Shown here piece after piece: positions 41 through 62,968 of a stretch of DNA of 64,000 nt (positions are counted from its first letter, which is position 1; the number at the start of each line of letters is the position of its first letter). The notes under the pieces are model-generated. The model was not told where the DNA came from. It worked only from the letters and a program-made list of their open reading frames with translations, and ran no database searches. This DNA is from Mytilus trossulus (Eukaryota): contig NC_086375.1 of NCBI RefSeq assembly GCF_036588685.1, positions 5,022,001 to 5,086,000 of the forward strand. The letters are read 5' to 3'. A program made the position numbers and the translations under genes.

Positions 41-180
41 GAAGGCCAGCTGAAGGACGCCTCCGGGTCCGGGAATTTCTCGCTACATTGAAGACCTGTT
101 AGTGACCTTCTTCTGTTGTCTGCTTTATGGTCGGGTTGTTGTCTCTTTGACACATCTCCCATTTCCATTCTCAATTTTAT
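41..180 (+). mobile_element. Short dispersed repeat = 3' tail of the Penelope-like (Naiad-type) family (family A)
   Basis: Reverse complement matches 17742-17880, which is contiguous with the RT-bearing copy; TAGTCAA at both 32-38 and 180-186 may be a target duplication. Confidence 0.75.
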
Positions 181-462: not shown

Positions 463-567
463 ACGGGATTCCATTGCATTGAAGACCTGTTGGTGACCTC
501 CTGCTGTTGTCTGCTCTATGGTCGGGTTGTTGTCTCTTTGGCACATTCCCCATTTTCATTCTCAAAA
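463..567 (+). mobile_element. Family A 3' tail fragment
   Basis: Near-identical to ~75-176 (cattgaagacctgtt...ttctcaa). Confidence 0.75.
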
Positions 568-2168
568 TAGAACAACACGGACCAAGCAAAATAAGAAATC
601 GATCTCATTTTCGATAATTTCCCAATTTTGGAAAAGAGAACATGATTTTGGTTACTATAAATAAACAATTTCCATGCTCTATACGACACGGAAATTCCAT
701 ATCAGTTTAATTGAATGTTAAATGGAAACATTGTTTTGTAATTGAAATCAGTTTCTGCATGGCACAGCCTTGCAACTGAAATTCTTACTTAAAACAATTG
801 AAAAACTCTCCAATAAAAATAATGTTATAAAAAACAAACACTATAACAAATTAGCTAGTACTTAAAATGAACTGTATAATTCAAGTTACTTCCAGGTGAA
901 ATACTATTAAATGAAACTATTCTGTCACTTCAAATTGTTTTATGTAAAAAAAAAATATAATAACACAAAAAGGTCACTTCAAATTGTTCCCGGTTAAGTA
1001 CATTTTATAGACACAAAATTGTAATCTCAATGGTTTCTACTCAAGTTCAATAGTTTATACAAAACAACGTAACACGGGAAACGACGAATACGCAAACGTG
1101 ATTTAATCGGGTCCTTGAGAAAAGGATAATAACCGAAATATCATTTCCGTACATATCGAAAAACGGCAACTTCCCACTTCCGGTTTTTACATTTTTACAA
1201 CATTTAAAATTAGAAAATTTTTATTACATGGAAATGGAACATATGGGATACTTGACCTGTATATAAATATATTTTTTTTATTTATTGTAAGTTTGATAAA
1301 TGTAAACACTTCATAGTAAGTATAGATAATTCAGTTTTATTATGAAAGTATGTTCTATATGTTTGTGTTGGTTTTTATCCAGTCAGATTTGTTTACTTTC
1401 TATCCTGATCCTGCATATGTTTGAAAGATTTTTGATGGTCAAATTGAGAATGATTAAAATTGATCGTCAAACGTTCTTGCATATATCTGTTTTATTCATA
1501 AATAAAAAATAAATAAAAAAAATAATGAAATGGTAGAAAAACTCGTTCAGAATAATAAAAAATGCATTTTTGTTTTTTTCTATTTCATTTAAAGTTCCAA
1601 TAAGCCGTGTTTAAATCCATTCATAAAATTCTAGAATACTTGTAATTTAATATAACCATCAAACAAAAAAACCTTTCTAAAACTATAGTTTTATTGACAA
1701 TTTTTACGACTAACTTGAATCTAATGTGATTTATGAAAACAATATTTGTAGTTTAAATTCCCGGGGAAATGTCATATAGCACTTTATTTTCCATCAACTA
1801 TACTCCTATCTCTATAGTCCATTTACAATCCTTATATGGACATTTAAAGTGCATTTAAAACTAATGGCTTTGGAAACATGTCTTTTAACGTTTTATATTT
1901 CTGACTGTTAATAAAACAAACAATGTACTGATGGGAATAAAATTGAGACAGTTATTTATTCAGAGCGAAAATAATAACTTCTATTTTTCTCTTTTTTTTC
2001 ATCCTATATTTACATTTTTGCTTTTTCATTTGTTATCTGTTCAAATATCTGATTCAAAATTATTTGTAAAATCTCGACGATGAAAATGAATAAAAAAATG
2101 TATCATAACCGTGTTTTTTTTTTGTTACTCTTTTTCTAAGGACAGTTTTAACTTAAATCGGGGAATAC

Positions 2169-2459
2169 TACGGAAGCGTATTAGCGCCACACATTTTTTT
2201 CCCCCTATGTTTGTGTATAAGGCAAACCTTTGCGTTGTAACGCAAACCTTTGCGTTTAACGCAAACATTTGCGTTCTAACGCAAACATTTTGCGTTATAA
2301 AAGGTTTGCGTTATAACGCGAAGGTTTGCGTTATAACGCAAAATGTTTGCGTTATAACGCAAAGGTTTGCGTTAAACGCAAAGGTTTGCGTTGTTTGCGT
2401 TATAACGCAAACATAGGAAAAAAAAAAAAAAAAATGTGTGGCGCTAATACGCTTCCGTA
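2169..2459. mobile_element. MITE with TAC...GTA termini and 6-bp TSD (IS3EU-like non-autonomous DNA transposon)
   Basis: TIR tacggaagcgtattagcgccacacattttt / aaaaatgtgtggcgctaatacgcttccgta; GAATAC at 2163-2168 and 2460-2465; interior built of aacgcaaacctttgcgtt palindromic units. Confidence 0.8.
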
Positions 2460-2509
2460 GAATACACCATGTATCTGCCTAAATAAGTTACATGAAGAAT
2501 GTTGTGTTC

Positions 2510-3095
2510 CAACCAAGTCAGGAATAAGTATTGTCAATTTCCTGTTTAAACCAAGTCAGGAATATTATTTTGTCAATTTACCTGTTTTAACTCATTATGG
2601 TCTTAGTATTTATCAATTTACCCGTTTTATCTGAGTCAGGAATAAGTATTGCCAATTTACCGGTTTTAACAAAGTCAGGAATAAGTATTGGAAATCTACC
2701 TGTTTTAACCAAGTCAGGAATAAGTGTTGTCAATCTACTTGTTTTCACCAAGTCGGACATAAGTGTTGTCAATTTACTTGTTTGACCAAGTCAGGAATAA
2801 GTATTGACAATTTACTTGTTTTAACCAAGTCGGGAATAAGAATTGTCAATTGACCTGTGTTAACAAAATCATTTTTTTCTAACCAAGTCAGACATGGTCG
2901 ATATGTTTTCTTCACTAAGTCAAAATTTGTCAATATGATTGTTGCTACCAAGTCAAAAATGATGAAGTTGCTTGCTATAACCAAGTCAAAAATTGACAAG
3001 CAATTCAAGAATTGTCAATATGTTTGTATTATACAAAGTCAGGTATTGGTCAATTTGTTTGTCTTTACTAAGCCAGGAGTTTTCAAGGTCAAGTA
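2510..3095. repeat. Degenerate tandem array, ~39-bp unit
   Basis: Recurrent aaccaagtcaggaataagtattgtcaatttacctgtttt, decaying to the right. Confidence 0.85.
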
Positions 3096-3475
3096 AATTA
3101 GTTTTTAACAATAAATCAGAATATGTCTGATAATATTTTCCTAATTGTATAACTTGAATATCCATTTCGTTTGGACATGTGCACGCCGTAGAAACTTAAC
3201 CGGAACACGTGGACGTACCATGTCTGTATTAAAATATTAATGAATAAGAGTTTCTGTAACAAGTCGTAATATCATGTTTGTTATCCAACACATGGGATCA
3301 TGTTTACTTTGTCGCAAAGTGATCGATGCTTTGATGTTACAGGTGTTGACTGCCAGGTAGCAGCTTGTAACACAGAAAAAAACGTAATCCAATAATATAT
3401 TGACCCAATAGTTACATTGTAATAGCACAGTTTTCTCAATGGTCGCTTTACGCAATTCTTTTTTTTTTCAGCGTT

Positions 3476-4106
3476 AATTTGAATACATATTTTTGGGACT
3501 GTTTTGACATTTTCAATTCTATGGTCTGCAAGATTTTACCTGATAAGCAGCAGAAAATCAACTTTTAAGTTTTTGTAAGTAACAGTTAACTTTTATTTAA
3601 CTTAGTATAAAGGTAAACGTATATTTGGCCATGCTTGTTTTGATTTACGTATTGAATAAATTCGTTCATGCTTGTTTTATTTTATGTATTGGATACATTC
3701 GTCCATGCTTGTTTTGTTTTACGTATTTGATACTTTCGTTCATGCTTGTTTGTTTTACGTATTGGCTACATTCGTTATGGTATAACTTATTGAATATGAA
3801 TTTGAATACATATTTTTGGGACTGTTTTGACATTTTCAATTCTATGGTCTGCAAGATTTTACCTGATAAGCAGCAGAAAATCAACTTTTAAGTTTTTGTA
3901 AGTAACAGTTAACTTTTATTTAACTTAGTATAAAGGTAAACGTATATTTGGCCATGCTTGTTTTGATTTACGTATTGAATAAATTCGTTCATGCTTGTTT
4001 TATTTTATGTATTGGATACATTCGTCCATGCTTGTTTTGTTTTACGTATTTGATACTTTCGTTCATGCTTGTTTGTTTTACGTATTGGCTACATTCGTTA
4101 TGGTAT
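3476..4106. repeat. Recent tandem duplication, period 323 bp
   Basis: 3476-3783 is essentially identical to 3799-4106. Confidence 0.9.
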
Positions 4107-17606: not shown

Positions 17607-17741
17607 GCTATGATATTTATAAATTGCAAGGAAAAACAGGTCTAAATGAAATTTAGATACTTTAATAGAGTCGAGGTAACATGGAGATTTGTATTCGTAA
17701 GTTGCATGATTTTTATCCGCCGTTACGGATTCAGAGTTATA

Positions 17742-18813
17742 ATAAAATTGAGAAAGGAAATGGTGAATATGTCAAAGCGACAACCACCCGACCATAGAGC
17801 AAACAACAACCGAAGGCAACCAATGGGTCTCCAATGTAGCGAGAATTCCCGCACCCGTAGGTGTCCTTCAGCTGGCCCCTAAAATTATGCATAATAGTAC
17901 AGTGATAATGGACGTCATACTAAACTCCGAATTATTCACAGGAAACTAAAATTGAAAATCATACAAGACTAACAAAGGCCAGAGGCTCCTGACTTGGGAC
18001 AGGCGCAAAATTGTTTATGAGATCTCAACCCTCCCCCTATACCTCTAGCCAATGTAGAAAAGTAAAAGAATAACAATACGCACATTAAAATTCAATTCAA
18101 GAGAAGTCCGAGTCCGATGTCAAAAGATGTAACAAAAGAAAATAAATAAGATGACAATAATACATAAATAACAACAGACTACTAGCAGTTAACTGACATG
18201 CCAGCTCCAGACCTCAATTAAACTGATTGAAAGATTATGTCTTCATCATATGAATATCAGGTACAATCCCTCCCGTTAGGGGTTTAGTATCATACTATCA
18301 TAAAATATATGAGAAAAAAACATAACCCGTGTCATGCCAACAACTGTTTTTTTTTTTGTTTTTTTTTTTTTTTAGAAATAAATGTGTAGGTCCGATGCAA
18401 AGACCCTATCAGTGAATCAATGTTAAAGCCAAAATATGCAATCTTTAATGACCTGACAACAGTATCGTAACTATATCCCCTTTTATTAAGTCTATTTAAA
18501 GGTTTTGTTAGTTTCTGATGAGAATACTGACATTTTTGTGCTTTATAAAGAATATTTCCATAAAAAATTGGATGTGAAATACCTGAACGTATAAGATGTC
18601 TGCATGTTGAATTATATTTACGAATTATTTCCTTATACCGGTGATAAAATTTAGTAAATGTTTTAACCAGTTTGTGATATCGAAAACCCTGGTGTAATAA
18701 TTTTTCAGTAATACATAAATTTCTCTCGCTAAAATCTAATACGTTGTTACATACACGAGCGAATCGTACAAGTTGAGATATATAAACACCATAAGATGGT
18801 GACAAGGGAACGT
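17742..18813 (-). mobile_element. 5'-truncated Penelope-like retroelement (Naiad-type): RT thumb/C-terminus plus long 3' region
   Basis: Translation VPLSPSYGVYISQLVRFARVC...LLHQGFRYHKLVKTFTKF; no GIY-YIG after the RT; colinear with 42035-42900. Confidence 0.8.
18243..18314 (-). promoter_or_regulatory. Type II SECIS-like hairpin in the retroelement 3'UTR
   Basis: Minus strand: tcatat-atttt-ATGAT-agtatgatact-AAA-cccctaacggga-gggattgtacc-TGAT-attc-atatga; helix I, GA quartet, 11-bp helix II, AAA, mini-stem. Confidence 0.7.
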
Positions 18814-19731
18814 TATAAGCATAATTGTTATTGACAATCTTTATTGCAAAATTAATAGTATTTAGCACTGAGCGCAACTAGTCTAATTTGTGGAAGATTT
18901 TATGCAAAAAAGAGGATATTTTTCCGACTAAGGGGAGATTCGGCCTCTATGTTATGACTCTTAATTCTGTTACTGTATTATAAAATTCATACTGAACACA
19001 CTTGTCAAGTATGTTCAATATATTAATGCACACGCTATGCTGGTTGAGAAACGGAATTCCAACGATACAAAGAAAAACGAGTTTGGACGGAATTTGAGCA
19101 GAATAAAATATCATTCGTTTGCATCTATTATCACATTTACAACAATAGTAATATGTTATTGTAATCACACTACCATCTGTTCCGTGATCTTTGTGATGTT
19201 TTAAGTAAGGACAGGTTTTCATACCCCATTAAAGCTTGAAGTTAACCGAGTTCAATGTTATATACACCCACCGAGGTAACAAGTGTTATGATTTGTATTG
19301 AATCATTTTATTGCACCACATAACTATAAAGTATGATAAATCATCCGTGATCTAAATACGGAAAATACACACAATATCGATAAGGGCATTAAATCATGTT
19401 ATCCATGGAGGTTTAAATCGGTCAGATCAATGAAATAGTTCGTTATTACGTTGATATGTACTGGTATGGTAAAGAAATCCATGTCGTATCTGTAGTCGTT
19501 TTTAAATGAAAAAAACCGGTTGTAATTTTGGTGCGTTCGACGAGCTGTTTTATAGATTCCTTGGTGGAGAAAGCCCAAATCTTGAAAATTGAAATCAAAG
19601 GATGTATAAGAATTTGAAAACGTGACGAGCTATATGACAAATAAGGCGCAGACATATAAACGTGGTGGGGTAAACCGTAACCATGTTACTGTTTGTGATG
19701 AATCCTCCTCCCCTGATCTGCAACAGTTGTG

Positions 19732-30303: not shown

Positions 30304-30630
30304 ATTGAAGGCCGTACATTGACCTATAATGGTTTACTTTTTTTTAAATTGTTATTTGAATGGAGAGTTGTCTCATTGGCACTCACACCACATCTTCCTA
30401 TATCTATTTTAAATAACGTACAGGAACCCATTATTTTAAAACCCAATCTTAAAATCTTTACAAAAATATCAGAAAATGTGGTATGAGTGACAATAAGAAA
30501 ACTCTCCATCTAAGTCACAATTTGTAAAAGTATACCAGTATAGGTAAAAGCACAGTGTTCAACACGGAGCCTTGGCTTACACCGAACATCAGGCTACAAA
30601 GGGCCCAACAAATTAGTAGTGTAAAACTAG
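30304..30630. mobile_element. Two opposed fragments of dispersed repeat family B (30304-30407 and 30472-30630)
   Basis: Match 52332-52496 in opposite orientations. Confidence 0.75.
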
Positions 30631-31615: not shown

Positions 31616-31659
31616 AATGAATTTTGAATTCAAGTTTGCGGCTACAAATACATTACGGT

Positions 31660-31859
31660 AAAATTGAGAAAGGAAATGGTAAATTTGTCAAAGCGACAAC
31701 CACCCCACCATAGAGCAGAAAACAGCCGAAGGCAACCAATGGGTCTTCAGTGTAGCGAGAATTCCCGCACCCGTAGGTGTCCTTCAGCTGGCCCCTAAAA
31801 ATATGCATAATATAGTACAGTGATAATGGACGTCATACTAAACTCCGAATTATACACAG
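31660..31859 (-). mobile_element. Family A 3' tail
   Basis: Near-identical to 17743-17942. Confidence 0.8.
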
Positions 31860-31964
31860 GTATCTGAAAGCGAGTGAAACATTATATGTTTTTGTTTTAT
31901 TTTATCTGTTTTTTATAAAGTTCTTGTTCGTGTATGTTATAAAAAATGTTGTTCATTAAAGTTG

Positions 31965-32250: not shown

Positions 32251-32719
32251 CATGTTTGTGTAGATGAAAGATTAACCCATATCCCCCCAAAAAAAATGAA
32301 TGGTTGGCGTCTGAATGCATGTTACAAATGTACGAAAGCTTCAAGTTTTATATGAAAAATATATTTTTGGTTTTGAAATTCAATAAAAAGTATTCTTATG
32401 TATCTTCGTTCCAAAAAAACAAATGTTCCTTTTTTATTCCGGCTGTCCTTCAATTTAAATCTACTGAAGCAAGAAAAAAGCAAGAAAAAAGTTGTAATAC
32501 TTATATTTTGACACATGTAGTGATATTGACAGCTTGCCCTTCCGAAATAGCTGAGTCCACTCCAGCTATTGATGTGTTCGAAGTGGTTCAATCATTTGTT
32601 TTCTGTAATTTTATTTGATGAACTGCTGTTTGTCTGGTCATCTTTTTTTGGCTTTGATGTTGCTTGTCTGTTTCATTTTGGCCCTGGTAACTGCTGGTGT
32701 TACTCAACTTTTTCATTTT

Positions 32720-35700
32720 CGCGTTGGTGTTGCTCGTCTTTTTCTTTTGGCCTCGGTGTTGCACGTCTGTTTCTTTTGGCCTCGGTGTTGCTCGTCTGTT
32801 TCTTTTGGCCCCGGTGTTGCACGTCTGTTTCTTTTGGCCTCGGTGTTGCACGTCTGTTTCTTTTGGCCTTGGTGTTACACGTCTGTTTCTTTTGGCCTCG
32901 GTGTTACACGTCTGTTTCTTTTGGCCTTGGTGTTACACGTCTGTTTCTTTTGGCCTCGGTGTTGCACGTCTGTTTCTTTTGGCCTCGGTGTTACACGTCT
33001 GTTTCTTTTGGCCTCGGTGTTGCACGTCTGTTTCTTTTGGCCTTGGTGTTACACGTCTGTTTCTTTTGGCCTCGGTGTTACACGTCTGTTTCTTTTGGCC
33101 TTGGTGTTACACGTCTGTTTCTTTTGGCCTCGGAATTGCACGTCTGTTTCTTTTGGCCTCGGTGTTACACGTCTGTTTCTTTTGGCCTCGGTGTTGCACG
33201 TCTGTTTCTTTTGGCCTTGGTGTTACACGTCTGTTTCTTTTGGCCTCGGTGTTACACGTCTGTTTCTTTTGGCCTCGGTGTTGCACGTCTGTTTCTTTTG
33301 GCCTCGGTGTTGCACGTCTGTTTCTTTTGGCCTTGGTGATGCACGTCTGTTTCTTTTGACCTCGGTGTTGCACGTCTGTTTCTTTTGGCCTTGGTGTTGC
33401 ACGTCTGTTTCTTTTGGCCTCGGTGTTGCACGTCTGTTTCTTTTGGCCTTGGTGATGCACGTCTGTTTCTTTTGGCCTCGGTGTTGCACGTCTGTTTCTT
33501 TTGGCCTCGGTGTTGCTCGTCTTTTTCTTTTGGCCTCGGTGTTGCACGTCTTTTTCTTCTGGCATTGGTGTTGCACGTCTGTTTCTTTTGGCTTTGGTGT
33601 TGCACGTTTGTTTCTTTTTGCCTCGGTGTTGCACGTCTGTTTCTTTTGGCCTTGGTGTTACACGTCTGTTTCTTTTGGCCTCGGTGTTACACGTCTGTTT
33701 CTTTTGGCCTCGGTGTTGCACGTCTGTTTCTTTTGGCCTCGGTGATGCACGTCTGTTTCTTTTGGCCTCGGTGTTGCACGTCTGTTTCTTTTGGCCTCGG
33801 TGTTGCACGTCTGTTTCTTTTGGCCTCGGTGTTGCACGTCTGTTTCTTGTGGCCTCGGTGTTGCACGTCTGTTTCTTTTGGCCTTGGTGATGCACGTCTG
33901 TTTCTTTTGGCCTCGGTGTTGCACGTCTGTTTCTTTTGGCCTCGGCGTTGCTCGTCTTTTTCTTCTGGCATTGGTGTTGCACGTCTGTTTCTTTTGGCTT
34001 TGGTGTTGCACGTTTGTTTCTTTTTGCCTCGGTGTTGCTCGTCTGTTTCTTTTGGCCTCGGTGTTGCACGTCTGTTTCTTTTGGCCTCGGTGATGCTCGT
34101 CTGTTTCTTTTGGCCTCGGTGTTGCACGTCTGTTTCTTTTGGCCTCGGTGTTGCACGTCTGTTTCTTTTTGCCTCGGTGTTGCTCGTCTGTTTCTTTTGG
34201 CCTCGGTGTTGCACGTCTGTTTCTTTTGGCCTCGGTGTTGCACGTCTGTTTCTTTTGGCCTCGGTGTTGCTCGTCTTTTTCTTCTGGCATTGGTGTTGCA
34301 CGTCTGTTTCTTTTGGCTTTGGTGTTGCACGTCTTTTTCTTCTGGCATTGGTGTTGTACGTCTGTTTCTTTTGGCCTTGGTGTTGCTCGTCTTTTTCTTC
34401 TGGCATTGGTGTTGCACGTCTGTTTCTTTTGGCCTTGGTGTTACACGTCTGTTTCTTTTGGCCTTGGTGTTGCACGTCTGTTTCTTTTGACCTTGGTGTT
34501 GCACGTCTGTTTCTTTTGGCCTCGGTGTTGCACGTCTGTTTCTTTTAGTCTAGGTGTTGCACGTCTGTTTCTTTAGGCCTCGGTGTTGCACGTCTGTTTC
34601 TTTTGGCCTTGGTGATGCACGTCTGTTTCTTTTGGACTCGGTGTTACACGTCTTTTTCTTTTGGCCTCGGTGTTGCACGTCTCTTTCTTTTGACCTTGGT
34701 GTTGCACGTCTGTTTCTTTTGGCCTCGGTGTTGCACGTCTGTTTCTTTTGGCCTCGGTGATGCACGTCTGTTTCTTTTGGCCTCGGTGATGCACGTCTAT
34801 TTCTTTTGGCCTCGGTGATGCACGTATGTTCCTTTTGGCCTCGGTGTTACACGTCTGTTTCTTTTGGCCTCGGTGATGCACGTCTATTTCTTTTGGCCTC
34901 GGTGATGCACGTCTGTTTCTTTTGGCCTCGGTGTTACACGTCTGTTTCTTTTGGCCTCGGTGTTACACGTCTGTTTCTTTTGGCCTCGGTGATGCACGTC
35001 TGTTTCTTTTGGCCTCGGTAATGCACGTCTATTTCTTTTGGCCTCGGTGATGCACGTCTGTTTCTTTTGGCCTCGGTGTTACACGTCTGTTTCTTTTGGC
35101 CTTGGTGTTACACGTCTGTTTCTTTTGGCCTCGGTGATGCACGTCTGTTTCTTTTGGCCTCGGTGTTACACGTCTGTTTCTTTTGGCCTCGGTGTTACAC
35201 GTCTGTTTCTTTTGGCCTTGGTGTTACACGTCTGTTTCTTTTGGCCTCGGTGTTGCACGTCTGTTTCTTTTGGCCTTGGTGTTGCACGTCTGTTTCTTTT
35301 GGCCTCGGTGATGCACGTCTATTTCTTTTGGCCTCGGTGTTACACGTCTGTTTCTTTAGGCCTCGGTGTTGCACGTCTGTTTCTTTTGGCCTTGGTGTTG
35401 CACGTCTGTTTCTTTTGGCCTCGGTGTTACACGTCTGTTTCTTTTGGCCTCTGTGTTGCACGTCTGTTTCTTTTGGCCTCGGTGTTACACGTCTGTTTCT
35501 TTTGGCCTCGGTGTTACACGTCTGTTTCTTTTGGCCTCTGTGTTGCACGTCTGTTTCTTTTGGCCTCGGTGTTACACGTCTGTTTCTTTTGGCCTCGGTG
35601 TTACACGTCTGTTTCTTTTGGCCTCGGTGATGCACGTCTGTTTCTTTTGGCCTTGGTGTTACACGTCTATTTCTTTTGACCTCGGTGTTGCACGTCTGTT

Positions 35701-38700
35701 TCTTTTGGCCTCGGTGATGCACGTCTGTTTCTTTTTGCCTTGGTGTTGCACGTCTGTTTCTTTTGGCCTCGGTGTTGCACGTCTGTTTCTTTTGGCCTTG
35801 GTGTTACACGTCTGTTTCTTTTGGCCTCGGTGATGCACGTCTGTTTCTTTTGGCCTTGGTGTTGCTCGTCTTTTTCTTTTGGCCTCGTTGTTGCACGTCT
35901 GTTTCTTTTGGCCTTGGTGTTGCACGTCTGTTTCTTTTAGTCTAGGTGTTGCACGTCTGTTTCTTTAGGCCTCGGTGTTACACGTCTGTTTCTTTTGGCC
36001 TCGGTGTTACACGTCTGTTTCTTTTGGCCTTGGTGTTGCTCGTCTTTTTCTTTTGGCCTCGGTGTTGCACGTCTGTTTCTTTTGGCCTTGGTGTTACACG
36101 TCTGTTTCTTTTGGCCTCGGTGATGCACGTCTGTTTCTTTTGGCCTCGGTGTTGCACGTCTGTTTCTTTTGGCCTCGGTGTTGCACGTCTGTTTCTTTTG
36201 GCCTCGGTGATGCACGTCTGTTTCTTTTGGCCTCGGTGTTACACGTCTGTTTCTTTTGGCCTCGGTGTTACACGTCTGTTTCTTTTGGCCTCTGTGTTGC
36301 ACGTCTGTTTCTTTTGGCCTCGGTGTTACACGTCTGTTTCTTTTGGCCTCGGTGTTACACGTCTGTTTCTTTTGGCCTCGGTGATGCACGTCTGTTTCTT
36401 TTGGCCTTGGTGTTACACGTCTATTTCTTTTGGCCTCGGTGTTGCACGTCTGTTTCTTTTGGCCTCGGTGATGCACGTCTGTTTCTTTTTGCCTTGGTGT
36501 TGCACGTCTGTTTCTTTTGGCCTCGGTGTTGCACGTCTGTTTCTTTTGGCCTTGGTGTTACACGTCTGTTTCTTTTGGCCTCGGTGATGCACGTCTGTTT
36601 CTTTTGGCCTTGGTGTTGCTCGTCTTTTTCTTTTGGCCTCGGTGTTGCACGTCTGTTTCTTTTGGCCTTGGTGTTGCACGTCTGTTTCTTTTAGTCTAGG
36701 TGTTGCACGTCTGTTTCTTTAGGCCTCGGTGTTACACGTCTGTTTCTTTTGGCCTCGGTGTTACACGTCTGTTTCTTTTGGCCTTGGTGTTGCTCGTCTT
36801 TTTCTTTTGGCCTCGGTGTTGCACGTCTGTTTCTTTTGGCCTTGGTGTTACACGTCTGTTTCTTTTGGCCTCGGTGATGCACGTCTGTTTCTTTTGGCCT
36901 CGGTGTTGCACGTCTGTTTCTTTTGGCCTCGGTGATGCACGTCTGTTTCTTTTGGCCTCGGTGTTGCACGTCTGTTTCTTTTGGCCTCGGTGTTACACGT
37001 CTGTTTCTTTTGGCCTCGGTGTTGCACGTCTGTTTCTTTTGGCCTCGGTGTTACACGTCTGTTTCTTTTGGCCTCGGTGATGCACGTCTGTTTCTTTTGG
37101 CCTCGGTGATGCACGTCTGTTTCTTTTGGCCTAGGTGATGCACGTCTGTTTCTTTTGGCCTCGGTGATGCACGTCTGTTTCTTTTGGCCTCGGTGTTGCA
37201 CGTCTGTTTCTTTTGGCCTCGGTGTTGCTCGTCTGTTTCTTTTGGCTTTGGTGTTGCACGTTTGTTTCTTTTGGCCTTGGTGATGCACGTCTGTTTCTTT
37301 TGGCCTCGGTGTTGCACGTCTGTTTCTTTTGGCCTCGATGTTGCACGTCTGTTTCTTTTGGCCTCGAGGTTACACGTCTGTTTCTTTTGGCCTCGGTGTT
37401 GCACGTCTGTTTCTTTTGGCCTCGGTGTTACACGTCTGTTTCTTTTGGCCTCGGTGATGCACGTCTGTTTCTTTTGGCCTCGGTGTTACACGTCTGTTTC
37501 TTTTGGCCTCGGTGATGCACGTCTGTTTCTTTTGGCCTCGGTGATGCACGTCTGTTTCTTTTGGCCTCGGTGATGCACGTCTGTTTCTTTTGGCCTCGGT
37601 GATGCACGTCTGTTTCTTTTGGCCTCGGTGATGCACGTCTGTTTCTTTTGGCCTCGGTGATGCACGTCTGTTTCTTTTGGCCTCGGTGATGCACGTCTGT
37701 TTCTTTTGGCCTCGGTGATGCACGTCTGTTTCTTTTGGCCTCGGTGATGCACGTCTGTTTCTTTTGGCCTAGGTGATGCACGTCTGTTTCTTTTGGCCTC
37801 GGTGTTGAACGTTTATTTCTTTTGGTCTAGGTGATGAACGTTTATTTCTTTTGGTCTAGGTGATGAACGTTTATTTCTTTTGGTCTAGGTGATGAACGTT
37901 TATTTCTTTTGGTCTAGGTGATGAACGTTTATTTCTTTTGGTCTAGGTGATGAACGTCTATTTCTTTTGGCCTTGGTGTTGCACGTCTTTTTCTTTTGGT
38001 CTAGGTGATGAACGTTTATTTCTTTTGGTCTAGGTGATGAACGTTTATTTCTTTTGGTCTAGGTGATGAACGTTTATTTCTTTTGGTCTAGGTGATGAAC
38101 GTCTATTTCTTTTGGCCTTGGTGTTGCACGTCTTTTTCTTTTGGCCTTGGTGTTGCACGTCTGTTTCTTTTGGCCCCGGTGTTACACGTCTGTTTCTTTT
38201 GGTCTAGGTGATGAACGTTTATTTCTTTTGGTCTAGGTGATGAACGTCTATTTCTTTTGGCCTTGGTGTTGCACGTCTTTTTCTTTTGGCCTTGGTGTTG
38301 CACGTCTGTTTCTTTTGGCCCCGGTGTTACACGTCTGTTTCTTTTGGTCTAGGTGATGAACGTTTATTTCTTTTGGTCTAGGTGATGAGCGTCTATTTCT
38401 TTTGGCCTTGGTGTTGCACGTCTTTTTCTTTTGGCCTTGGTGTTGCACGACTGTTTCTTTTGGCCCCTGTGATGCATGTCTGTTTCTTTTGGTCTTGGTA
38501 ATGAACGCCTGTTTCTTTTGGCCCCTGTGATGCATGTCTGTTTCTTTTGGTCTTGGTAATGAACGCCTGTTCCTTTTGGCCCCTGTGATGCATGTCTGTT
38601 TCTTTTGGTCTAGGTCATGAACGCCTGTTTCTTTTGGCCCCTGTGATGCATGTCTGTTTCTTTTGGTCTTGGTAATGAACGCCTGTTTCTTTTGGCCCCT

Positions 38701-39080
38701 GTGTTGCACGTCTGTTTCTTTTGGTCTTGGTAATGAACGCCTGTTTCTTTTGGCCCCTGTGTTGCACGTCTGTTTCTTTTGGTCTTGGTAATGAACGCCT
38801 GTTTCTTTTGGCCCCTGTGTTGCACGTCTGTTTCTTTTGGTCTAGGTCATGAACGTCTATTTATTTTTGCCTTGGTGTTGCATATCTTTGTCTTTGGCCT
38901 AAGTGTTGCTCGTCTGGGTTTTTTTTGTCTTGGTTTTGCTCGTCTTTTTCATTTGGCCTTGGTGTTGCTCGTCTGTGTTGTTTTTGGCCTTTGTGTTGCA
39001 CGTCTGTTTCTTTGAACCTTGGTTATTAACGCATTCTCTTTTTGCCTTGGTGTCGTCGTCTGTTTCTTTTGATCTTGGCG
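32720..39080. repeat. Large satellite array, 29-bp unit, ~220 copies
   Basis: cacgtctgtttcttttggcctcggtgttg with regional variants and degenerate edges. Confidence 0.97.
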
Positions 39081-42034: not shown

Positions 42035-44660
42035 AAACAAGAAAATAAAAATAAAAATTATACAAGACTTACAAAGGCCAGAGGCTCCAGACTTGGAACA
42101 GGCGCAAGAATGCGGCGGGGTTTAACACGTTTATGAGATCTAAACCCTCCCCTATAACTCAAGCCAATGTAGAAAAGTAAACGCATCACAATATGCACAT
42201 TAAAATTCAGTTCAAGAGACGTCCGAGTCTGTTGTCAGAATATGTAACCAAAGAAAATAAATAAAATGACAATACTTCATAAATAACAACAGACTACTAG
42301 CAGTTAACTGACATGCCCGCTCCAGACTTCAACTAAACTGATTGAAAGATTATGTCTTTATCATATGAACAATAGGCACAATCCTTTCCGTTAGGGGTTT
42401 AGTATCATACTATCATAACAAATATGAGAAGAACATAACCCGTGTCATGCCAATATCTGGTTTGTAAATAAATGTGTGAAAAGACCCTATAAGTGAATCA
42501 ATATTAACACCAACATATGCAATCTTTAATGACCTGACAACAGTATCGTAACAATATCCATTCTTAATAAGTCTATTAAAAGGTTTTGTTAGCTTCTGAG
42601 GTGAATACTCACATGTTTGTGCTTTATAAAGAATATTTCCAAAAAAATTGGATGTGAAATACCTGAACGTATAAGAAGTCTGCATGTTAAGCTATATTTA
42701 CGAATGATCTTCTTATAGTGATGATAAAATTTAGTAAATGTTTGGCCTAGTTTGTGATATCGAAAACCCTGGTGTAATAATTTTTCAGTATTAAATACAT
42801 AAATTTCTCTCGTTAAAATCTCCAATATTGTTACATATACGAGCGAATCGTACAAGTTGAGATATATAAACACCGTAAAGATGGTGACAAGGGAACGCCA
42901 CCATCTAAAAATGGATCATTAACGATAGTAAATGAAAAATCATCTCTTTTATCCTAAATTTTAGTATTAAGCTTTCCGTTAATGATATAGATATCAAGAT
43001 CGAGGAAAAGGCAGTGGTCAATGTTAGTATTAGTTTTATTCAAAGTAAGTTCAACATGATAAAGTTCTTTAGTATACATACTGAAGTCGTCATTATTGAG
43101 AGACAACATATCATTCAAATAACTAAAAGTATTATTAAATGTGAATCAGATGTTGTTTCGATGGGTCTTTGCTGTTTTTTGTCATAAATTGTAACTCATA
43201 GCAATACAAAAACAGGTCCGCAATAAATGGTGCACAGTTAGTCCCCATTAGAATCCCGATAACCTGAAAATATACGGAATCTCCAAAGCGAACGAAAATG
43301 TTATCTAGTAAAAATTCAAGGGCAGATATAGTAACAAAGCATGTCCAATTGACAAAGTTTTTTAGTTGATTGCTACTAGAAAATGACCTAAACGAGTTTG
43401 AACATGTATATTCACACTCTGACTTTATAAATGCCAATTTAATTAGGTATGTGGCTTTTTTTCTTAATGGAAATGTGAGGCAATGTGGTATATTGGGTAG
43501 AAAAATCAAAAGGTTGAATAGATTCAAAATCACCAATATAATCATGCAGTTTATCAAGTACTTACAACGAGTTTTTGACACTCCAAAAGTAATTAATTCC
43601 ACTATTTTCGAGGGGCCATTTTCGAAGGCCTTATTTGAACAATTTATTATCAGTTTTTTTATTTTACCAAGTGTACTGGTAAGAACAATAGACAATTTAG
43701 CAGAGGAACAATGGCTTGAAGACGAAATAAATCTATATTTGTAGGGTGTTTTGTGGAGCTTCGGAAGCCAATACATCGTATTTGGTTCTGCTTGTAAAGC
43801 GGTAGATGTTTTTTTACAGATGCCGTTTGCTGAAAATGGAGTCAGTTGGAATGTTGGTGAATTGGTGATTTCTTTTTGCAGATCCTTAATGTAAAATTTA
43901 CGGGGCGCCGAATGGGACTTGCGTTTTGTAATCAAAATCAATTTTGTGTACACAAAATTCAATTATGACATAGCAAAATCATTTTTGTCATTTGTTTTAA
44001 TTTCCATATTAGGTACCAAAATTCAATTTTGTATGCAAATAGGTATGCAAATATAAACTTATTTGCATACAAAATTGACTTTTGTTACCTAATATGGAAA
44101 TTAAAACACAAAAGTCAATTTTGTGGGACAAAATTGAATTTGTACACAATTAACAAGTTGATCAAATTAGCATCATGTGATTTTGTAATGAATTTTGTGT
44201 TTATTTTTGTGTAGACAAAATTGACTTTTGTGACACAAAATTGACTTTTGTGACACAAAATTGACTTTTGTGGCACAAAGTTGACTTTTGTGTTAAATTT
44301 TCCCTTCTGTTTAACAAAACTCATTTTTTTTCTACACAAAATCTCAGTTTTGTATGCAAATTAGTTCACTGAATTCAAACTAAACTAATTAGCATACAAA
44401 ATTGACTTTTGTCGCCCAATTTTCAATTAGGTAACAAAAGTAAAGTCTGTGTTACAAAAATGAATTTTGTTATGACAACAGTAACTTTTGTCCACTGAAA
44501 GATAATTAAATTTGTAGTATGCTACAAATTTTGTTAAACTGAAATCATTTTTGTTGAACAAAACTCACTTTTGTCCGTACAAAATTGAATTTCGAGTACA
44601 AAACTACAAGAGTCCCATTCGGCGCCACGTAAAATTTACGTCAAACAATAATAATAGCAG
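42035..44660 (-). mobile_element. Decayed Penelope-like (Naiad-type) RT retroelement, interrupted by a MITE
   Basis: MYWLPKLHKTPYKYRFI, FDFSTQYTTLPH (motif A, frameshifted), GILMGTNCAP (B), FSYLND (mutated YLDD), FLDLDI, YISQL-type thumb; stops and frameshifts. Confidence 0.85.
43899..44631. mobile_element. MITE with TACG...CGTA ends inserted in the RT ORF
   Basis: TIR tacggggcgccgaatgggact / agtcccattcggcgccacgta; duplicated gtaaaatttacg makes TSD length ambiguous (5-11 bp); internal acaaaattgacttttgt repeats. Confidence 0.85.
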
Positions 44661-48252: not shown

Positions 48253-48413
48253 ATATCTTACTTTTTACATATTGTAACGTGGATGGAGAGTTGTCTAACT
48301 TGCTCTCAGACCAAATCTTCTTTTAGTACTATATATATTACCTTCTAAAACGAATGTGTGCGCAAGATGAATTATGATGAAGCTTATTTGCTCATTTCAG
48401 GGACACGTATAAA

Positions 48414-51644: not shown

Positions 51645-52331
51645 TAACTTAATATACCCATCAGCGTAAATTGAATGATGACACAGTGGTTATTAATAAA
51701 AGATTAAAAGAATGTAGAAATATTTGGTTCATTATTCAAATAAGTTAATGGGAATTTTTGCTATCCCAATAATGAATATGGCCAAGTTTGGTGTTACAAA
51801 TCAAGAAGTTGCATTCTAATGTATAATTATGGCGGATATTCCCTTCCATAGTATTCCGATCAGTGTCATTTTAAGTTACAACAACAAATATGTCCCAATT
51901 CACGTTCAAAATACATTTGACGTTGTAATGGTACTGCAACTCACGCACACATGTTCCAGGTAGTGTTCCGGAAGTTAACATCCACTTTTTCTATCGATTT
52001 TAACTATTTTTTAATCATGTGAACGTTTCATGGTGTTCCGGGGGTTGAACACACCCCCTTTTCAAAATTAACGGATATGTGCCTTCGCAAGTGCATCCCT
52101 TGATTTATTGGAGACATTGTTTTGTCAGATGTCTCATTTTCTTCCCTCTAAACTTGATCATTTTTATTTTTGATCTGACATAATGATTAGGGAGATCAAC
52201 TTACATGTAACATGGTATATGTTGTTGTAGATATTCACTGTTAACGGCCATCTTGGATTGTACAATATCAGTACACAGTCGGTCTACTTATTCTTCTAAA
52301 TCTTGAGACAGATTTGCATTTTATGTGTAAA

Positions 52332-52496
52332 TAGATATAGGAAGATGTGGTGTGAGTGCCAATGAGACAACTCTCCATCCAAATAACAATTTAAAAATTA
52401 AACCATTATAGGTTAAAGTACGGCCTTCAACACGGAGCCTTGGCTCACACCGAACAACAAGCTATAAAGGGCCCCAAAATTACTAGTGTAAAACCA
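52332..52496. mobile_element. Dispersed repeat family B, young copy
   Basis: Nearly identical, inverted, to 62665-62830. Confidence 0.8.
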
Positions 52497-59079: not shown

Positions 59080-60145
59080 AAGGCAATAGTAGTATGCCGC
59101 TGTTCAAAAGTCATAAATCGATTGAGAGAAAACAAATCTGTAGTATAAACTTACATCGAGGGAAACACATCAACTTTAAGAGGAAAACAACGAAACAACA
59201 GAAACACCGAAGTGCAACAAAAAACAAACTACTATGCAATATACATAGAAACGAACTATTAGATTACAACTGCCATATTTCTGACTTGGTATAGGACATT
59301 TTAAGAACAAAATGGTAGGTTGAACCAGGTTTTGTGGCTAGCAAAATCTCACACTTTATGGCAATGGTAAATATACCGCTAAGATGACAACATTACATGA
59401 CCAGAATACAGCACAAATAAATATAAGAACTCTCAGGACGAACAAAATAAATTAATAAATAATATGATAGTGCATTTTGACATGTTAACCAAAAAATAAA
59501 AACGTGTCACACGAATGTATTAACGCCTCAAAAGGTGACGTCACAGGTGTGATTAGGTTGGTACTTATGTTATTTGATACGTCTTATAGCAATGCGAATT
59601 CACACTCAGTTAAACAGTTATATTCTGGAAAAGTTTACGCTCGGTACTTTAAAGACCAGAAGACGTAAATGGTAAACCACAATCTAAGACGTGATAAAAA
59701 AATGTCTTTAGTTAGTTAAAACGCAGACACATCGTATGTAACACACTCATGTATATGAAGTCCGTATAGTGTGCACCTGCACGAGTATAACGTATCAATT
59801 GAGATATGTAAACACCATACGATAAGGCAGAGGGTATGTTACTGCTGAGAAATGGGAAATTGATAATTGGGACGATTTCAACGTTTGTTATAGATTTTAG
59901 TGTTAAGTGTTAACCGCACATCTATTCACATTCAGCAAAACCGTCATATTCGGGAAAAGGTCACGTTTGGTACTTCTCAATAACTTTGTTCGAGCAGGTT
60001 CTTCGTTGGAGCAACCCCGTATATGAAGTCCGTATAGTGTAAACATACACGAGTTTAACCTGGGAAATTGATAATTCGGTCGTTGAAATCGTTCCGTTTG
60101 TCATAGATTTTAGTGTTAAGCGGTAACCGCACATCTATGCACATA
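59080..60145 (-). mobile_element. Decayed 3' part of a second Penelope-like RT family, with internal rearrangement
   Basis: 59740-59910 minus translates LNTKIYNKR..PIINFPFLSSNIPSALSYGVYISQLIRYTRA; part repeated at 60015-60145; 3' boundary approximate. Confidence 0.65.
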
Positions 60146-62611: not shown

Positions 62612-62830
62612 TTCTCGTTTCTCGTTTTGTTTATATAGATTAGACCGTTGGTTTTCCCGTTTGAATGGTTTTACACTAGTAATTTTGGGGCCCTTTATAG
62701 CTTGTTGATCGGTGTGAGCCAAGGCTCCGTGTTGAAGGCCGTTCTTTAACCTATAATGGTTAACTTTTTAAATTGTTATTTGGATGGAGAGTTGTCTCAT
62801 TGGCACTCAACCCACATCTTCCTATATCTA
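62612..62830. mobile_element. Dispersed repeat family B
   Basis: Inverted match to 52332-52496. Confidence 0.8.
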
Positions 62831-62968
62831 TGGTAAGATTTTTAAAACATCCTATTGATTATACCGAATAGGAAACCATACTGTAAACTACATGTATTTT
62901 TATTCTTTTTGTTGTGTTACATGTACATGTATCAAAATTTCGTGCTCTCTTCGTGTTAGTTCGATTCA

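What the first reader, a model, noticed from the sequence alone, without database searches (positions are those of the whole stretch)
18243..18314. SECIS-like element inside a retrotransposon: candidate selenoprotein-encoding Penelope-like (Naiad) family
Seen: about 70 nt after the apparent RT C-terminus (IGSLHR) on the minus strand lies a hairpin with helix I (tcatat/atatga), AUGA-U/UGAU quartet, 11-bp helix II (9/11 paired incl. GU), unpaired AAA and a ccc/ggg mini-stem, i.e. type II eukaryotic SECIS architecture. The second copy (~42360-42428) keeps the 5' arm and AAA but has lost the 3' UGAU. Known: Naiad PLEs have a C-terminal RT, and some spider and clam Naiads encode selenoproteins. Inference: this family uses host Sec recoding, tying transposition to selenium supply, and truncated copies scatter SECIS modules through the genome. 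I cannot tell whether it has been reported for this lineage.
Basis: partly seen in the sequence, partly recalled or inferred. Interest (0 to 1): 0.85.

Follow-up and report, generated by a model that had tools for sequence, protein, structure and literature searches.

The report
Relic SECIS of a selenoprotein-coding retrotransposon
The hairpin is a real selenocysteine-insertion signal left in a dead, truncated copy of a Naiad-type jumping gene; intact copies elsewhere in this mussel-like genome need four UGA codons read as selenocysteine, which extends a kind of element first described in 2021 to a new host.

Summary

- **The hairpin.** Window 18247-18311 (-) matches Rfam SECIS_1 over the full model at 30.9 bits. 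That is below the gathering score of 35. About 0.2 such hits are expected by chance in the whole genome.
- **Its setting.** It lies in the 3'UTR of a 5'-truncated copy (18813-17741, -) of a ~4.0 kb Naiad Penelope-like element. This copy is dead and holds no UGA site itself.
- **Intact copies elsewhere.** All 15 full-length copies I read from a young subfamily (98.7% alike) keep a 1002-codon frame ending in TAA. They carry in-frame TGA at codons 55, 86, 97 and 522. Non-Sec relatives have Cys at all four positions.
- **Selection.** dN/dS between subfamilies is about 0.16 in every segment between the TGAs.
- **Second family.** Another family in this genome shows five TGAs.
- **Outside the genome.** In 76 marine-metagenome relatives, recurrent in-frame stops occur only at these sites plus the CxC cysteine, and all are TGA. 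A SECIS follows the stop in 16 of 21 TGA-bearing contigs and in 0 of 11 Cys-only contigs.
- **Novelty.** The kind is known (Craig et al. 2021, clams and spiders). I found no paper reporting it for mussels.
- **Earlier work.** The scan had already reached the same reading on other DNA of this genome.
- **Still missing.** Selenocysteine incorporation itself has not been shown.

The parts
18247..18311 (-). SECIS hairpin (form 2, with apical mini-stem). AUGA 18301-18298; helix II 18296-18287 with 18269-18260; AAA 18285-18283; CCC/GGG 18282-18280 with 18274-18272; UGAU 18259-18256; helix I 18311-18307 with 18251-18247.
   Evidence: Rfam SECIS_1 30.9 bits over the full model. The same hairpin scores 27.7-31.4 bits in 17 of 19 other copies. 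RNAalifold recovers helix I, helix II and the mini-stem.
17741..18813 (-). Copy 1: a 5'-truncated, dead copy of the ~4.0 kb Naiad element (element positions 2904-3974, subfamily A). It holds the last ~141 codons of the RT plus the whole 3'UTR.
   Evidence: Alignment to full-length copies at 93-95% identity to subfamily A copies. The 3' end ...CTCAATTTTATT is shared by all copies.
18392..18814 (-). Remnant of the RT C-terminus (thumb region), ending ...IGSLHR. The family stop codon is lost through a 2-nt deletion. None of the UGA sites lies in this remnant.
   Evidence: Translation. 81.5% identity to residues 847-1001 of the intact ORF. 5457 database relatives at E<=0.001.
18345..18375 (-). A-rich run in the 3'UTR, expanded in this copy (7-8 A in most copies).
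   Evidence: Family alignments.
42037..43902 (-). Copy 2: an older, 5'- and 3'-truncated copy (element positions 1889-3772; codons 523-1002 plus most of the 3'UTR).
   Evidence: blastn at 87.8% over 1905 nt and tblastn hits.
42362..42426 (-). Decayed SECIS of copy 2. The 3' UGAU is mutated to UAUU and the mini-stem GGG to GGA.
   Evidence: Alignments.
44629..44656 (-). 28-nt fragment identical to the element around the DKA+8 codon (ATT ATT ATT GTT TGA CGT...). It is the only in-frame Sec-site TGA of the family present in the window. It lies ~730 nt upstream of copy 2.
   Evidence: Exact 28-nt match, E=6e-9.
31659..31869 (-). Fragment of the element's 3' terminal ~210 nt (an extremely 5'-truncated copy).
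44..180 (+). Fragment of the element's 3' terminal ~140 nt. A further fragment lies at 477-565 (+).

Best explanation
**What it is.** The hairpin is the SECIS element of a selenoprotein-encoding Naiad, a Penelope-like retrotransposon with an N-terminal GIY-YIG endonuclease and a C-terminal RT.

**How the active element works.**
- The element is about 3974 nt: a 322-nt 5'UTR, a 1002-codon ORF ending in UAA, and a 643-nt 3'UTR.
- The mRNA carries UGA at four conserved cysteine positions. These are the second Cys of the CX2-5CxxC finger, the Cys before GIY-YIG, the first Cys of the CCHH finger, and the Cys 8 residues after DKA.
- The SECIS lies about 75-90 nt after the stop codon.
- Inferred: the SECIS recruits the host SBP2/eEFSec/Sec-tRNA machinery, so that these UGAs are read as selenocysteine and the full EN-RT protein is made.
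- The protein then copies the RNA into new sites by target-primed reverse transcription. This step often truncates the 5' end.

**What the window holds.** It holds two such truncated, dead products. Copy 1 keeps a SECIS identical to the commonest form in its subfamily but has no UGA codon and a broken ORF end, so here the SECIS is a relic.

**Shown.** The family identity, the TGA codons at Cys sites, intact frames, purifying selection across the TGAs, the SECIS scores, and the association and covariation of the SECIS in distant relatives.

**Inferred.** That Sec, rather than another residue, is inserted, and that the SECIS is what drives it.
For: 1. **SECIS_1 scores.** The window hairpin scores 30.9 bits. 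The subfamily with intact ORFs scores 32.8 bits. Nine copies score above the gathering score, up to 42.9 bits.
2. **Intact frames.** All 15 full-length subfamily-B copies were picked by DNA similarity to a 601-nt query, not by ORF state. All have a 1002-codon frame with no TAA, TAG or frameshift, and 14 of 15 carry all four TGAs. They are 98.7% alike and have unrelated flanks.
   - In a wider scan, 51 of 63 scored copies keep an open frame of at least 1004 codons with 4 TGAs. A second family has 5 TGAs, and 6 of its 10 scored copies are open for at least 1003 codons.
3. **TGA is ancestral to both subfamilies.** Subfamily A shows TGA in 12/16, 16/16, 16/16 and 24/24 copies at the four sites.
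4. **Purifying selection.** dN/dS between A and B is about 0.16 at dS of about 0.29. By segment it is 0.17, 0.06, 0.16 and 0.15 before, between and after the TGAs.
5. **Cys in relatives.** Non-Sec relatives have Cys at each site. Relatives that are 75-80% identical have Cys at 522.
6. **Metagenome relatives.** In 76 contigs, recurrent stops occur only at positions 55, 86, 97, 385 and 522. They are seen in 4, 18, 20, 23-25 and 28 contigs and all are TGA. Every other stop occurs in only one or two contigs.
7. **SECIS association.** A SECIS follows the stop in 16 of 21 TGA-bearing contigs and 0 of 11 Cys-only contigs, Fisher p=7e-5.
8. **Covariation of helix II.** Its arms are only 39% alike between 13 families, yet pair at 9.15 of 10 positions within an element against 5.72 of 10 across elements.
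9. **A versus B differences in the hairpin.** All six lie in unpaired positions or keep or create a pair. Only 2.1% of random sets of six changes do so.
10. **Host machinery.** The host has tRNA-Sec genes at 79.6 and 77 bits.
11. **Agreement with the literature.** The pattern matches the clam and spider Sec-Naiads of Craig et al. 2021, PMC8557442.
Against: - The window hairpin and both main subfamilies score below Rfam's gathering score (30.9 and 32.8 against 35). Helix II has one or two mismatches, one of them next to the core quartet in subfamily A.
- Within this genome there are no double-sided compensatory changes.
- The whole 3'UTR is conserved between subfamilies (about 7% divergence against dS 0.29). 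The SECIS is no better conserved than its surroundings, so conservation alone does not single it out.
- The cis/trans pairing test used hairpins that were found by a pairing pattern, so it is biased upward.
- Five TGA-bearing metagenome contigs gave no SECIS call. One Cys-only contig (L145) has a 30-bit hit upstream of its ORF.
- There is no RNA, ribosome or protein evidence.
- SECISearch3 was not available.
- Pfam finds no domain on the ORF pieces.
Confidence: 0.88

Rival explanations
1. The UGA codons are read through, but not as selenocysteine (near-cognate Trp, Cys or Arg suppression, or another recoding signal). The 3'UTR hairpin would then serve another purpose, such as recognition of the RNA 3' region by the element's own RT.
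For: The whole 3'UTR, not just the hairpin, is conserved well below the synonymous rate. That fits a cis role in reverse transcription. The SECIS scores are below Rfam's cut-off. No protein evidence exists.
Against: The recoded positions are always Cys in relatives, which is the signature of Sec/Cys exchange. The hairpin has the SECIS-specific AUGA, GA and AAA at the right spacing in 13 families whose helices share only 39% identity. It is found after the stop only where in-frame TGAs exist. Its place relative to the stop moves between families (7 nt against 90-140 nt), yet it stays in the 3'UTR.
Confidence: 0.07
2. The TGAs are true stops. On this view the family is non-autonomous or dead, is copied in trans by a Cys-encoding Naiad, and the hairpin resembles a SECIS by chance.
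For: Related families with Cys at site 522 exist (P0204 and P0205) and could in principle supply protein in trans. The sampled subfamily-A long copies are all frameshifted.
Against: Under this view nothing would keep 1002 codons free of TAA, TAG and frameshifts in 15 of 15 copies. Nothing would hold dN/dS at 0.16 downstream of the first stop. Nothing would place stops only at Cys codons in dozens of lineages at 30-66% identity. A chance hairpin of this score is expected 0.06-0.2 times per genome.
Confidence: 0.02
3. The window copy itself is still functional. On this view its SECIS lies in the 3'UTR of a host transcript and serves a host selenoprotein gene.
For: The hairpin of copy 1 is intact and identical to the commonest form in its subfamily. 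Craig et al. proposed that truncated Sec-Naiads could donate SECIS elements to genes.
Against: No long ORF or gene-like feature lies upstream on the minus strand. The neighbourhood is AT-rich repeat sequence. Thousands of equivalent copies exist. I have no annotation or expression data.
Confidence: 0.02

Closest known systems
Clam selenoprotein Naiads Naiad_Scon and Naiad_Mmer (Craig, Yushenova, Rodriguez, Arkhipova 2021, PMC8557442)
   Same: An N-terminal GIY-YIG Naiad with UGA at the Cys before GIY-YIG, at the first Cys of the CCHH finger and at the Cys 8 residues after DKA. The true stop is UAA or UAG. The SECIS is in the 3'UTR. The host is a bivalve, and copy number is high with 5' truncation and pLTRs.
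   Different: The host looks like a mussel (Mytilus-like), not a heterodont clam. There is a fourth UGA at the second Cys of CX2-5CxxC, a site so far reported only in a spider family. A sister family in the same genome has five TGAs. The SECIS core lies about 87 nt after the stop rather than 1-21 nt. The SECIS has an apical mini-stem (form 2), whereas the paper reports type I. I could not compare sequences directly because the paper's supplements are not held.
Spider selenoprotein Naiads Naiad_Sdum and Naiad_Smim (same paper)
   Same: Multi-Sec Naiads. UGA at the Cys before GIY-YIG and at DKA+8, and in the CX2-5CxxC finger.
   Different: The spider families lack the UGA in the CCHH finger. The paper infers that they arose independently of the clam families.
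Rfam RF00031 SECIS_1 (eukaryotic SECIS)
   Same: Full-length alignment with AUGA, AAA, UGAU, helix I, helix II and the mini-stem in register.
   Different: The window copy scores 30.9 bits and the active subfamily 32.8 bits, both under the gathering score of 35. Single-base variants among the copies reach 35-43 bits.
Canonical Penelope/Poseidon/Neptune PLEs
   Same: GIY-YIG plus a TERT-like RT, pLTRs, 5' truncation and tails at the junctions.
   Different: Those families have the EN C-terminal to the RT, carry hammerhead ribozymes in the pLTRs, and none codes for Sec.
Selenoprotein P
   Same: One of the few proteins with several Sec residues decoded from one mRNA. It is especially Sec-rich in bivalves (cited in PMC8557442).
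   Different: It is a host gene that usually has two SECIS elements, with Sec used for selenium transport. Here Sec replaces metal-binding or structural Cys in a transposon enzyme, and only one SECIS is seen.

Membership tests
Naiad clade of Penelope-like elements | GIY-YIG endonuclease N-terminal to the RT in one ORF | tested here: met
   In full-length copies...IIYLLT[TGA]NKPGCGIQYVGETGRYLSKRTQEH... lies at codons ~90-120, and the RT motifs (FDFSTLY, GIPMGTNCAP, RYLDDILAL) at codons ~660-790. The homologue P0202 carries Pfam PF01541 and P0213 carries PF00078. Pfam itself finds nothing on the mussel pieces.
Naiad clade of Penelope-like elements | Diagnostic CxC motif between EN and RT, and DKA in place of DKG | tested here: met
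   ...TPTSCNCSNSEY... at codons 381-392 and ...VPADKAANN... at 510-518.
Naiad clade of Penelope-like elements | CCHH and CX2-5CxxC zinc-finger-like motifs in the EN (the latter lengthened in mussels) | tested here: met
   C-HAKK-[TGA]-LT-C and [TGA]-NKPG-C, aligned with C..C in Cys-type relatives. Two of the Cys positions are TGA.
Naiad clade of Penelope-like elements | pLTR (partial tandem copy upstream), variable 5' truncation, body of 3.4-4.4 kb | tested here: met
   A partial 3' copy (element 2941-3995) lies ~43 nt upstream of full-length copies in many loci. More than 20 different truncation points were seen. The body is 3974 nt.
Naiad clade of Penelope-like elements | No canonical hammerhead ribozyme | tested here: met
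   Permissive Rfam scans of 30 loci that include pLTRs list no hammerhead family.
Naiad clade of Penelope-like elements | Insertion bias for (TA)n microsatellites | tested here: inconclusive
   The 3' flanks of subfamily A copies are AT-rich. The 15 subfamily B flanks show no clear (TA)n.
Eukaryotic SECIS element | AUGA on the 5' side and GA on the 3' side of a non-Watson-Crick quartet at the base of helix II | tested here: met
   AUGA at 18301-18298 and UGAU at 18259-18256. The same holds in 13 divergent families.
Eukaryotic SECIS element | Unpaired AA(R) 9-13 nt after the core, in the apical loop or bulge | tested here: met
   AAA lies 12 nt after AUGA. AAA or AA lies at 11-12 nt in 13 families.
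Eukaryotic SECIS element | Score at or above the Rfam SECIS_1 gathering threshold | tested here: not met
   30.9 bits in the window and 32.8 bits in the active subfamily, against 35. Nine individual copies pass at 35.4-42.9 bits. The gathering score is a curation cut-off, not a functional criterion.
Eukaryotic SECIS element | Located in the 3'UTR of an mRNA with in-frame UGA | tested here: met
   In full-length copies the SECIS follows the TAA stop, and the four TGAs lie 1.5-2.9 kb upstream. In the window copy no UGA site remains.
Eukaryotic SECIS element | Structure supported by covariation | tested here: met
   Within the genome only one-sided changes are seen. Across 13 families, helix II and the mini-stem covary, with the caveat of ascertainment bias.
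Eukaryotic SECIS element | Binds SBP2 and supports UGA recoding | not testable with these tools
   Needs a reporter or binding assay.
Selenoprotein | In-frame UGA aligned with Cys in homologues | tested here: met
Selenoprotein | Coding conservation continues downstream of the UGA | tested here: met
   dN/dS is 0.06-0.17 in all four segments. Frames are intact.
Selenoprotein | Host has Sec machinery | tested here: met
   tRNA-Sec hits at 79.6 and 77 bits, against a gathering score of 47. I did not search for the protein factors.
Selenoprotein | Selenium demonstrably incorporated | not testable with these tools
   Needs 75Se labelling or mass spectrometry.

The most novel reading that the evidence does not exclude
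Sec-coding Naiads may be a large, old clade of marine-invertebrate retrotransposons rather than a few oddities. In this clade Cys-to-Sec conversion has spread stepwise over up to five sites, including the CxC cysteine, which has not been reported before. The thousands of relic SECIS hairpins they leave in a mussel genome may matter to the host, either by seeding new selenoprotein genes or by competing for SBP2. That would couple transposon load to the selenoproteome.
Probability: 0.12. Interest if true: 0.85.

Novelty: new member of a known kind. Interest (0 to 1): 0.55.

Why it matters
- **Rarity.** Selenoprotein-coding transposons are known from a single 2021 paper and four families.
- **A better study system.** This genome holds a young family that looks recently active. 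It has more than 100 copies with intact coding segments, four Sec codons (five in a sister family) and its own SECIS. That makes the phenomenon open to experiment in a farmed, well-studied animal group.
- **A natural series for Sec gain.** The mosaic of TGA and Cys at five fixed positions across dozens of lineages shows how Cys sites become Sec once a SECIS is in place.
- **A practical warning.** In this genome the best-scoring SECIS_1 hits that were scored are all transposon copies. SECIS-based selenoprotein discovery, and gene callers that stop at TGA, will therefore be misled.
- **A testable idea.** The same copies are a ready source of SECIS modules for host genes, as Craig et al. suggested. 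This can now be tested.

Tried and rejected
- **Wrong first reading of the 5' boundary.** All 40 genome hits started at query position 68. I first took this for a fixed 5' end of a short non-autonomous element. It only reflected truncation of the window copy itself. All-against-all comparison shows variable truncation and a 4 kb parent.
- **Pfam.** It finds nothing on the window ORF or on the pieces of the intact ORF.
- **The search of protein representatives.** With the 141-aa remnant it gave only short fragments. That shows the domain is widespread but not what it belongs to.
- **Tree of the top SECIS hits.** I built a tree of 465-nt regions around the top-scoring SECIS hits, to see whether the improved hairpins mark subfamilies. 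It was uninformative because many of those copies are partial. Those hits were also chosen by score, so they cannot be used as evidence of selection.
- **P0160.** I tested whether this protein, which ends just before the CxC Cys, is the five-TGA family of this genome. It is not: identity is only 71%.
I therefore could not read the five-TGA family at nucleotide level, and its fifth site and its SECIS are unknown.
  - The paper's supplementary sequences are not held, so there was no direct comparison with Naiad_Scon or Naiad_Mmer.
- **Consensus sequences.** I built no full-length consensus and repaired no frame. All statements about ORFs come from individual genomic copies.
Full report
**1. The observation**

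On the minus strand of 18314-18246 the sequence reads UCAUAU-AUUUU-AUGA-U-AGUAUGAUAC-U-AAA-CCCC-UAAC-GGGA-G-GGAUUGUACC-UGAU-AUU-CAUAUGA. Rfam's SECIS_1 model aligns end to end (model positions 1-64) to 18247-18311 (-) at 30.9 bits, with two non-canonical pairs in helix II. This is below the gathering score of 35, so the whole-window scan at gathering threshold was blank. A scan of the whole 1.3 Gb assembly gives an E-value of about 0.2 for this score, so the match is not what chance gives. It has lost the 3' UGAU and one G of the mini-stem.

**2. What the hairpin sits in**

The 181-codon ORF upstream is a remnant. Local BLAST and a search of the window's own genome show that 18813-17741 (-) is one copy of a repeat with thousands of members. 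The first look found 3887 candidates, and the best 40 are 88-96% identical.

At first all copies seemed to start at the same base. That was an artefact of the window copy being truncated there. All-against-all comparison shows more than 20 different 5' truncation points, and some copies run on further. Longer stretches give a unit of about 4.0 kb. It is often preceded, after about 43 nt, by a partial tandem copy of its own 3' part, which is a pLTR.

In the family the ORF ends ...IGSLHRN followed by TAA. The window copy has a 2-nt deletion there and an expanded A-run.

**3. The parent element**

Translation of the long copies shows the following:
- an N-terminal GIY-YIG endonuclease (…GIQYVGETGRYLSKRTQEH…)
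- a CxC motif
- VPADKAANN (the DKA motif)
- RT motifs, including RYLDD

This is the Naiad architecture of Craig et al. 2021 (PMC8557442). Permissive Rfam scans of 30 loci list no hammerhead ribozyme, which also fits Naiads.

Two subfamilies stand out:
- **Subfamily A.** The window copy belongs here. The sampled long copies are all frameshifted.
- **Subfamily B.** It is about 89% identical to A.

I read fifteen B copies in full. They were chosen by DNA similarity to a 601-nt query, not by coding state. All 15 have a 1002-codon frame from ATG to TAA with no TAA, TAG or frameshift. They carry in-frame TGA at codons 55, 86, 97 and 522, and 14 of the 15 have all four. They are 98.7% identical on average and have unrelated flanks.

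A six-frame protein search of the genome widens this picture:
- 51 of 63 scored copies have open frames of at least 1004 codons with four TGAs.
- A second family has five TGAs, and 6 of its 10 scored copies are open for at least 1003 codons.

More than 100 copies keep the 424-codon piece between TGA97 and TGA522 intact.

**4. Are the TGAs decoded?**

- *The sites are cysteine positions.* In relatives without TGA, the aligned residues are Cys at the second position of the CX2-5CxxC finger, before GIY-YIG, at the first Cys of the CCHH finger, and 8 residues after DKA. The last three are exactly the positions Craig et al. give for clam Sec-Naiads. The first is one they give for a spider family.
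- *TGA is older than the subfamily split.* Subfamily A copies have TGA in 12/16, 16/16, 16/16 and 24/24 cases at the four sites.
- *Selection continues across the TGAs.* Pairwise dN/dS between A copies and a B copy is 0.16 overall, at dS of about 0.29. In the segments before, between and after the TGAs it is 0.17, 0.06, 0.16 and 0.15.
- *The host has the machinery.* Two tRNA-Sec loci score 79.6 and 77 bits.

True stops would not leave this pattern.

**5. Is the hairpin the SECIS?**

Within the genome:
- The hairpin scores 27.7-31.4 bits in 17 of 19 A copies.
- It scores 32.8 bits in all five B pLTR copies scanned. There a G-C pair replaces the A·C mismatch at the base of helix II.
- The six differences between the A and B hairpins all lie in unpaired positions, or they keep or create a pair. 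Only 2.1% of random sets of six substitutions do so.
- RNAalifold recovers helix I, helix II and the mini-stem, but finds only one-sided changes.
- The 3'UTR as a whole is conserved (about 7% divergence), so conservation alone does not single out the hairpin.

**6. Evidence from outside the genome**

A word-indexed protein search with the 424-residue piece returned 66 relatives:
- About 40 of them (40-61% identity) end exactly at ...DKAANNxxxx.
- Seven end just before the first Cys of the CxC motif.
- Four have W at the TGA positions, which suggests they were called with a TGA=Trp genetic code.

A scan of metagenome contigs then gave 76 marine contigs at 28-66% identity. In these contigs:
- Recurrent in-frame stops occur only at positions 55, 86, 97, 385 and 522, in 4, 18, 20, 23-25 and 28 contigs. 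All of them are TGA.
- Where there is no TGA, the codon is nearly always TGT or TGC.
- Every other stop is seen in only one or two contigs.
- The combinations are mosaic, from all five TGA, to only position 522, to none.

A SECIS_1 hit (27-32 bits) or a simple SECIS pattern lies after the stop codon in 16 of 21 TGA-bearing contigs that have enough 3' sequence. It lies there in 0 of 11 Cys-only contigs (Fisher p=7e-5). Counting distinct families, the figures are 11 of 16 against 0 of 7, p=0.005.

In most contigs the AUGA lies 7 nt after the stop, as in the published families. In the two closest relatives of the mussel family it lies 91-144 nt downstream, much as in the mussel.

Across 13 distinct SECIS elements, the helix II arms share 39% identity between families. 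Yet they pair at 9.15 of 10 positions within an element, against 5.72 of 10 across elements. The AAA keeps its distance from the core, and the apical mini-stems covary: CCC/GGG, CCG/CGG, UCCA/UGGA. These hairpins were partly found by a pairing pattern, so the size of that contrast is inflated. The location-specific association is the cleaner test.

**7. The spread of SECIS copies**

The genome-wide SECIS_1 scan had about 42,000 rough first-look candidates, of which 130 were scored. I fetched the top 20, which score 33.6-42.9 bits, nine of them above the gathering score. All 20 are copies of this Naiad family. The best carry a single change that repairs the A·G mismatch in helix II. I could not decide whether these mark subfamilies or are chance variants.

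**8. Verdict on the window**

- Copy 1 (18813-17741) and copy 2 (43902-42037) are dead, truncated insertions.
- Copy 1 keeps an intact SECIS but no UGA site.
- Copy 2 begins at codon 523 and has a decayed SECIS.
- A 28-nt exact fragment holding the DKA+8 TGA lies at 44656-44629.

**9. Novelty and prior work**

The kind is known from Craig et al. 2021, in two clams and two spiders. That paper counts Mytilus Naiads but does not flag them as Sec. The held literature has no report for mussels. The host identity is an inference, based on:
- a 1.30 Gb assembly
- an 84%-identical fragment inside a Mytilus edulis gene model

New here:
- the host group
- the combination of four sites, and a five-TGA sister family
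- TGA at the CxC cysteine in many metagenome lineages
- a form-2 SECIS set well downstream of the stop

Earlier entries of this scan on other DNA of the same genome reached the same reading. I arrived at mine before reading them.

**10. Limits**

- There is no expression or protein evidence.
- SECISearch3 was not available.

Noticed in passing
window 32571-38900: A long array of a 29-nt tandem repeat (215 or more registers, 91-96% alike). It is GC-richer than its surroundings (0.44-0.48 against ~0.32) and has a very strong AT skew (-0.5 to -0.77).
   Followed up: no
window 44629-44656 (-): A 28-nt fragment 100% identical to the Naiad element around its DKA+8 TGA. It lies ~730 nt upstream of the 5' end of copy 2 and overlaps that end by 12 nt of element sequence. 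It may be a junction 'tail' or a rearranged piece of the same insertion.
   Followed up: partly
window 59691-59870 (-): A weak protein match (43% over 68 residues) to the RT thumb region of the Naiad ORF. It is probably a remnant of another Penelope-like family.
   Followed up: no
window 52331-52496 and 62666-62831: Inverted repeat arms of 166 nt, 96% complementary and 10.2 kb apart. Related arms lie at 30341-30409 and 48264-48325. They look like copies of another interspersed repeat.
   Followed up: no
G000 C10:63843916-63855579 and C10:64461689-64492367: Tandem arrays of a tRNA-like sequence spaced every ~891-900 nt. All units score 45.9 bits with the tRNA-Sec model, just under its cut-off. 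They are probably a long-variable-arm tRNA gene cluster. The true tRNA-Sec loci are on C9:67288420 and C1:41171809.
   Followed up: no
L145:477-540 (+) (metagenome contig ERZ1740060 NODE-6062): A Naiad relative with Cys at all five sites and no in-frame TGA in the aligned part has a 30-bit SECIS_1 hit upstream of its ORF and none after its stop. This is unexplained. It could belong to a neighbouring or pLTR copy, or be chance.
   Followed up: partly
G000, e.g. C6:19978356-19979900, C3:48571215-48572759, C7:22658073-22659617: A second Naiad family in the same genome has five in-frame TGAs within the first ~580 codons and open frames of 1003 codons. I could not fetch it, so the fifth site is unknown.
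   Followed up: partly
L103:4345-4440 (metagenome contig): The SECIS position right after the stop holds AUGA and a 3' GA. About 25 extra nt appear to be inserted in helix II, and neither Rfam nor the pattern scan calls it. It may be a disrupted SECIS in a TGA-bearing copy.
   Followed up: no
P0214 (NCBI: sulfotransferase 1A1-like, Mytilus edulis): A public gene model contains a 55-residue stretch 84% identical to the Naiad ORF (residues 148-202). A transposon fragment has been annotated as part of a host protein.
   Followed up: no
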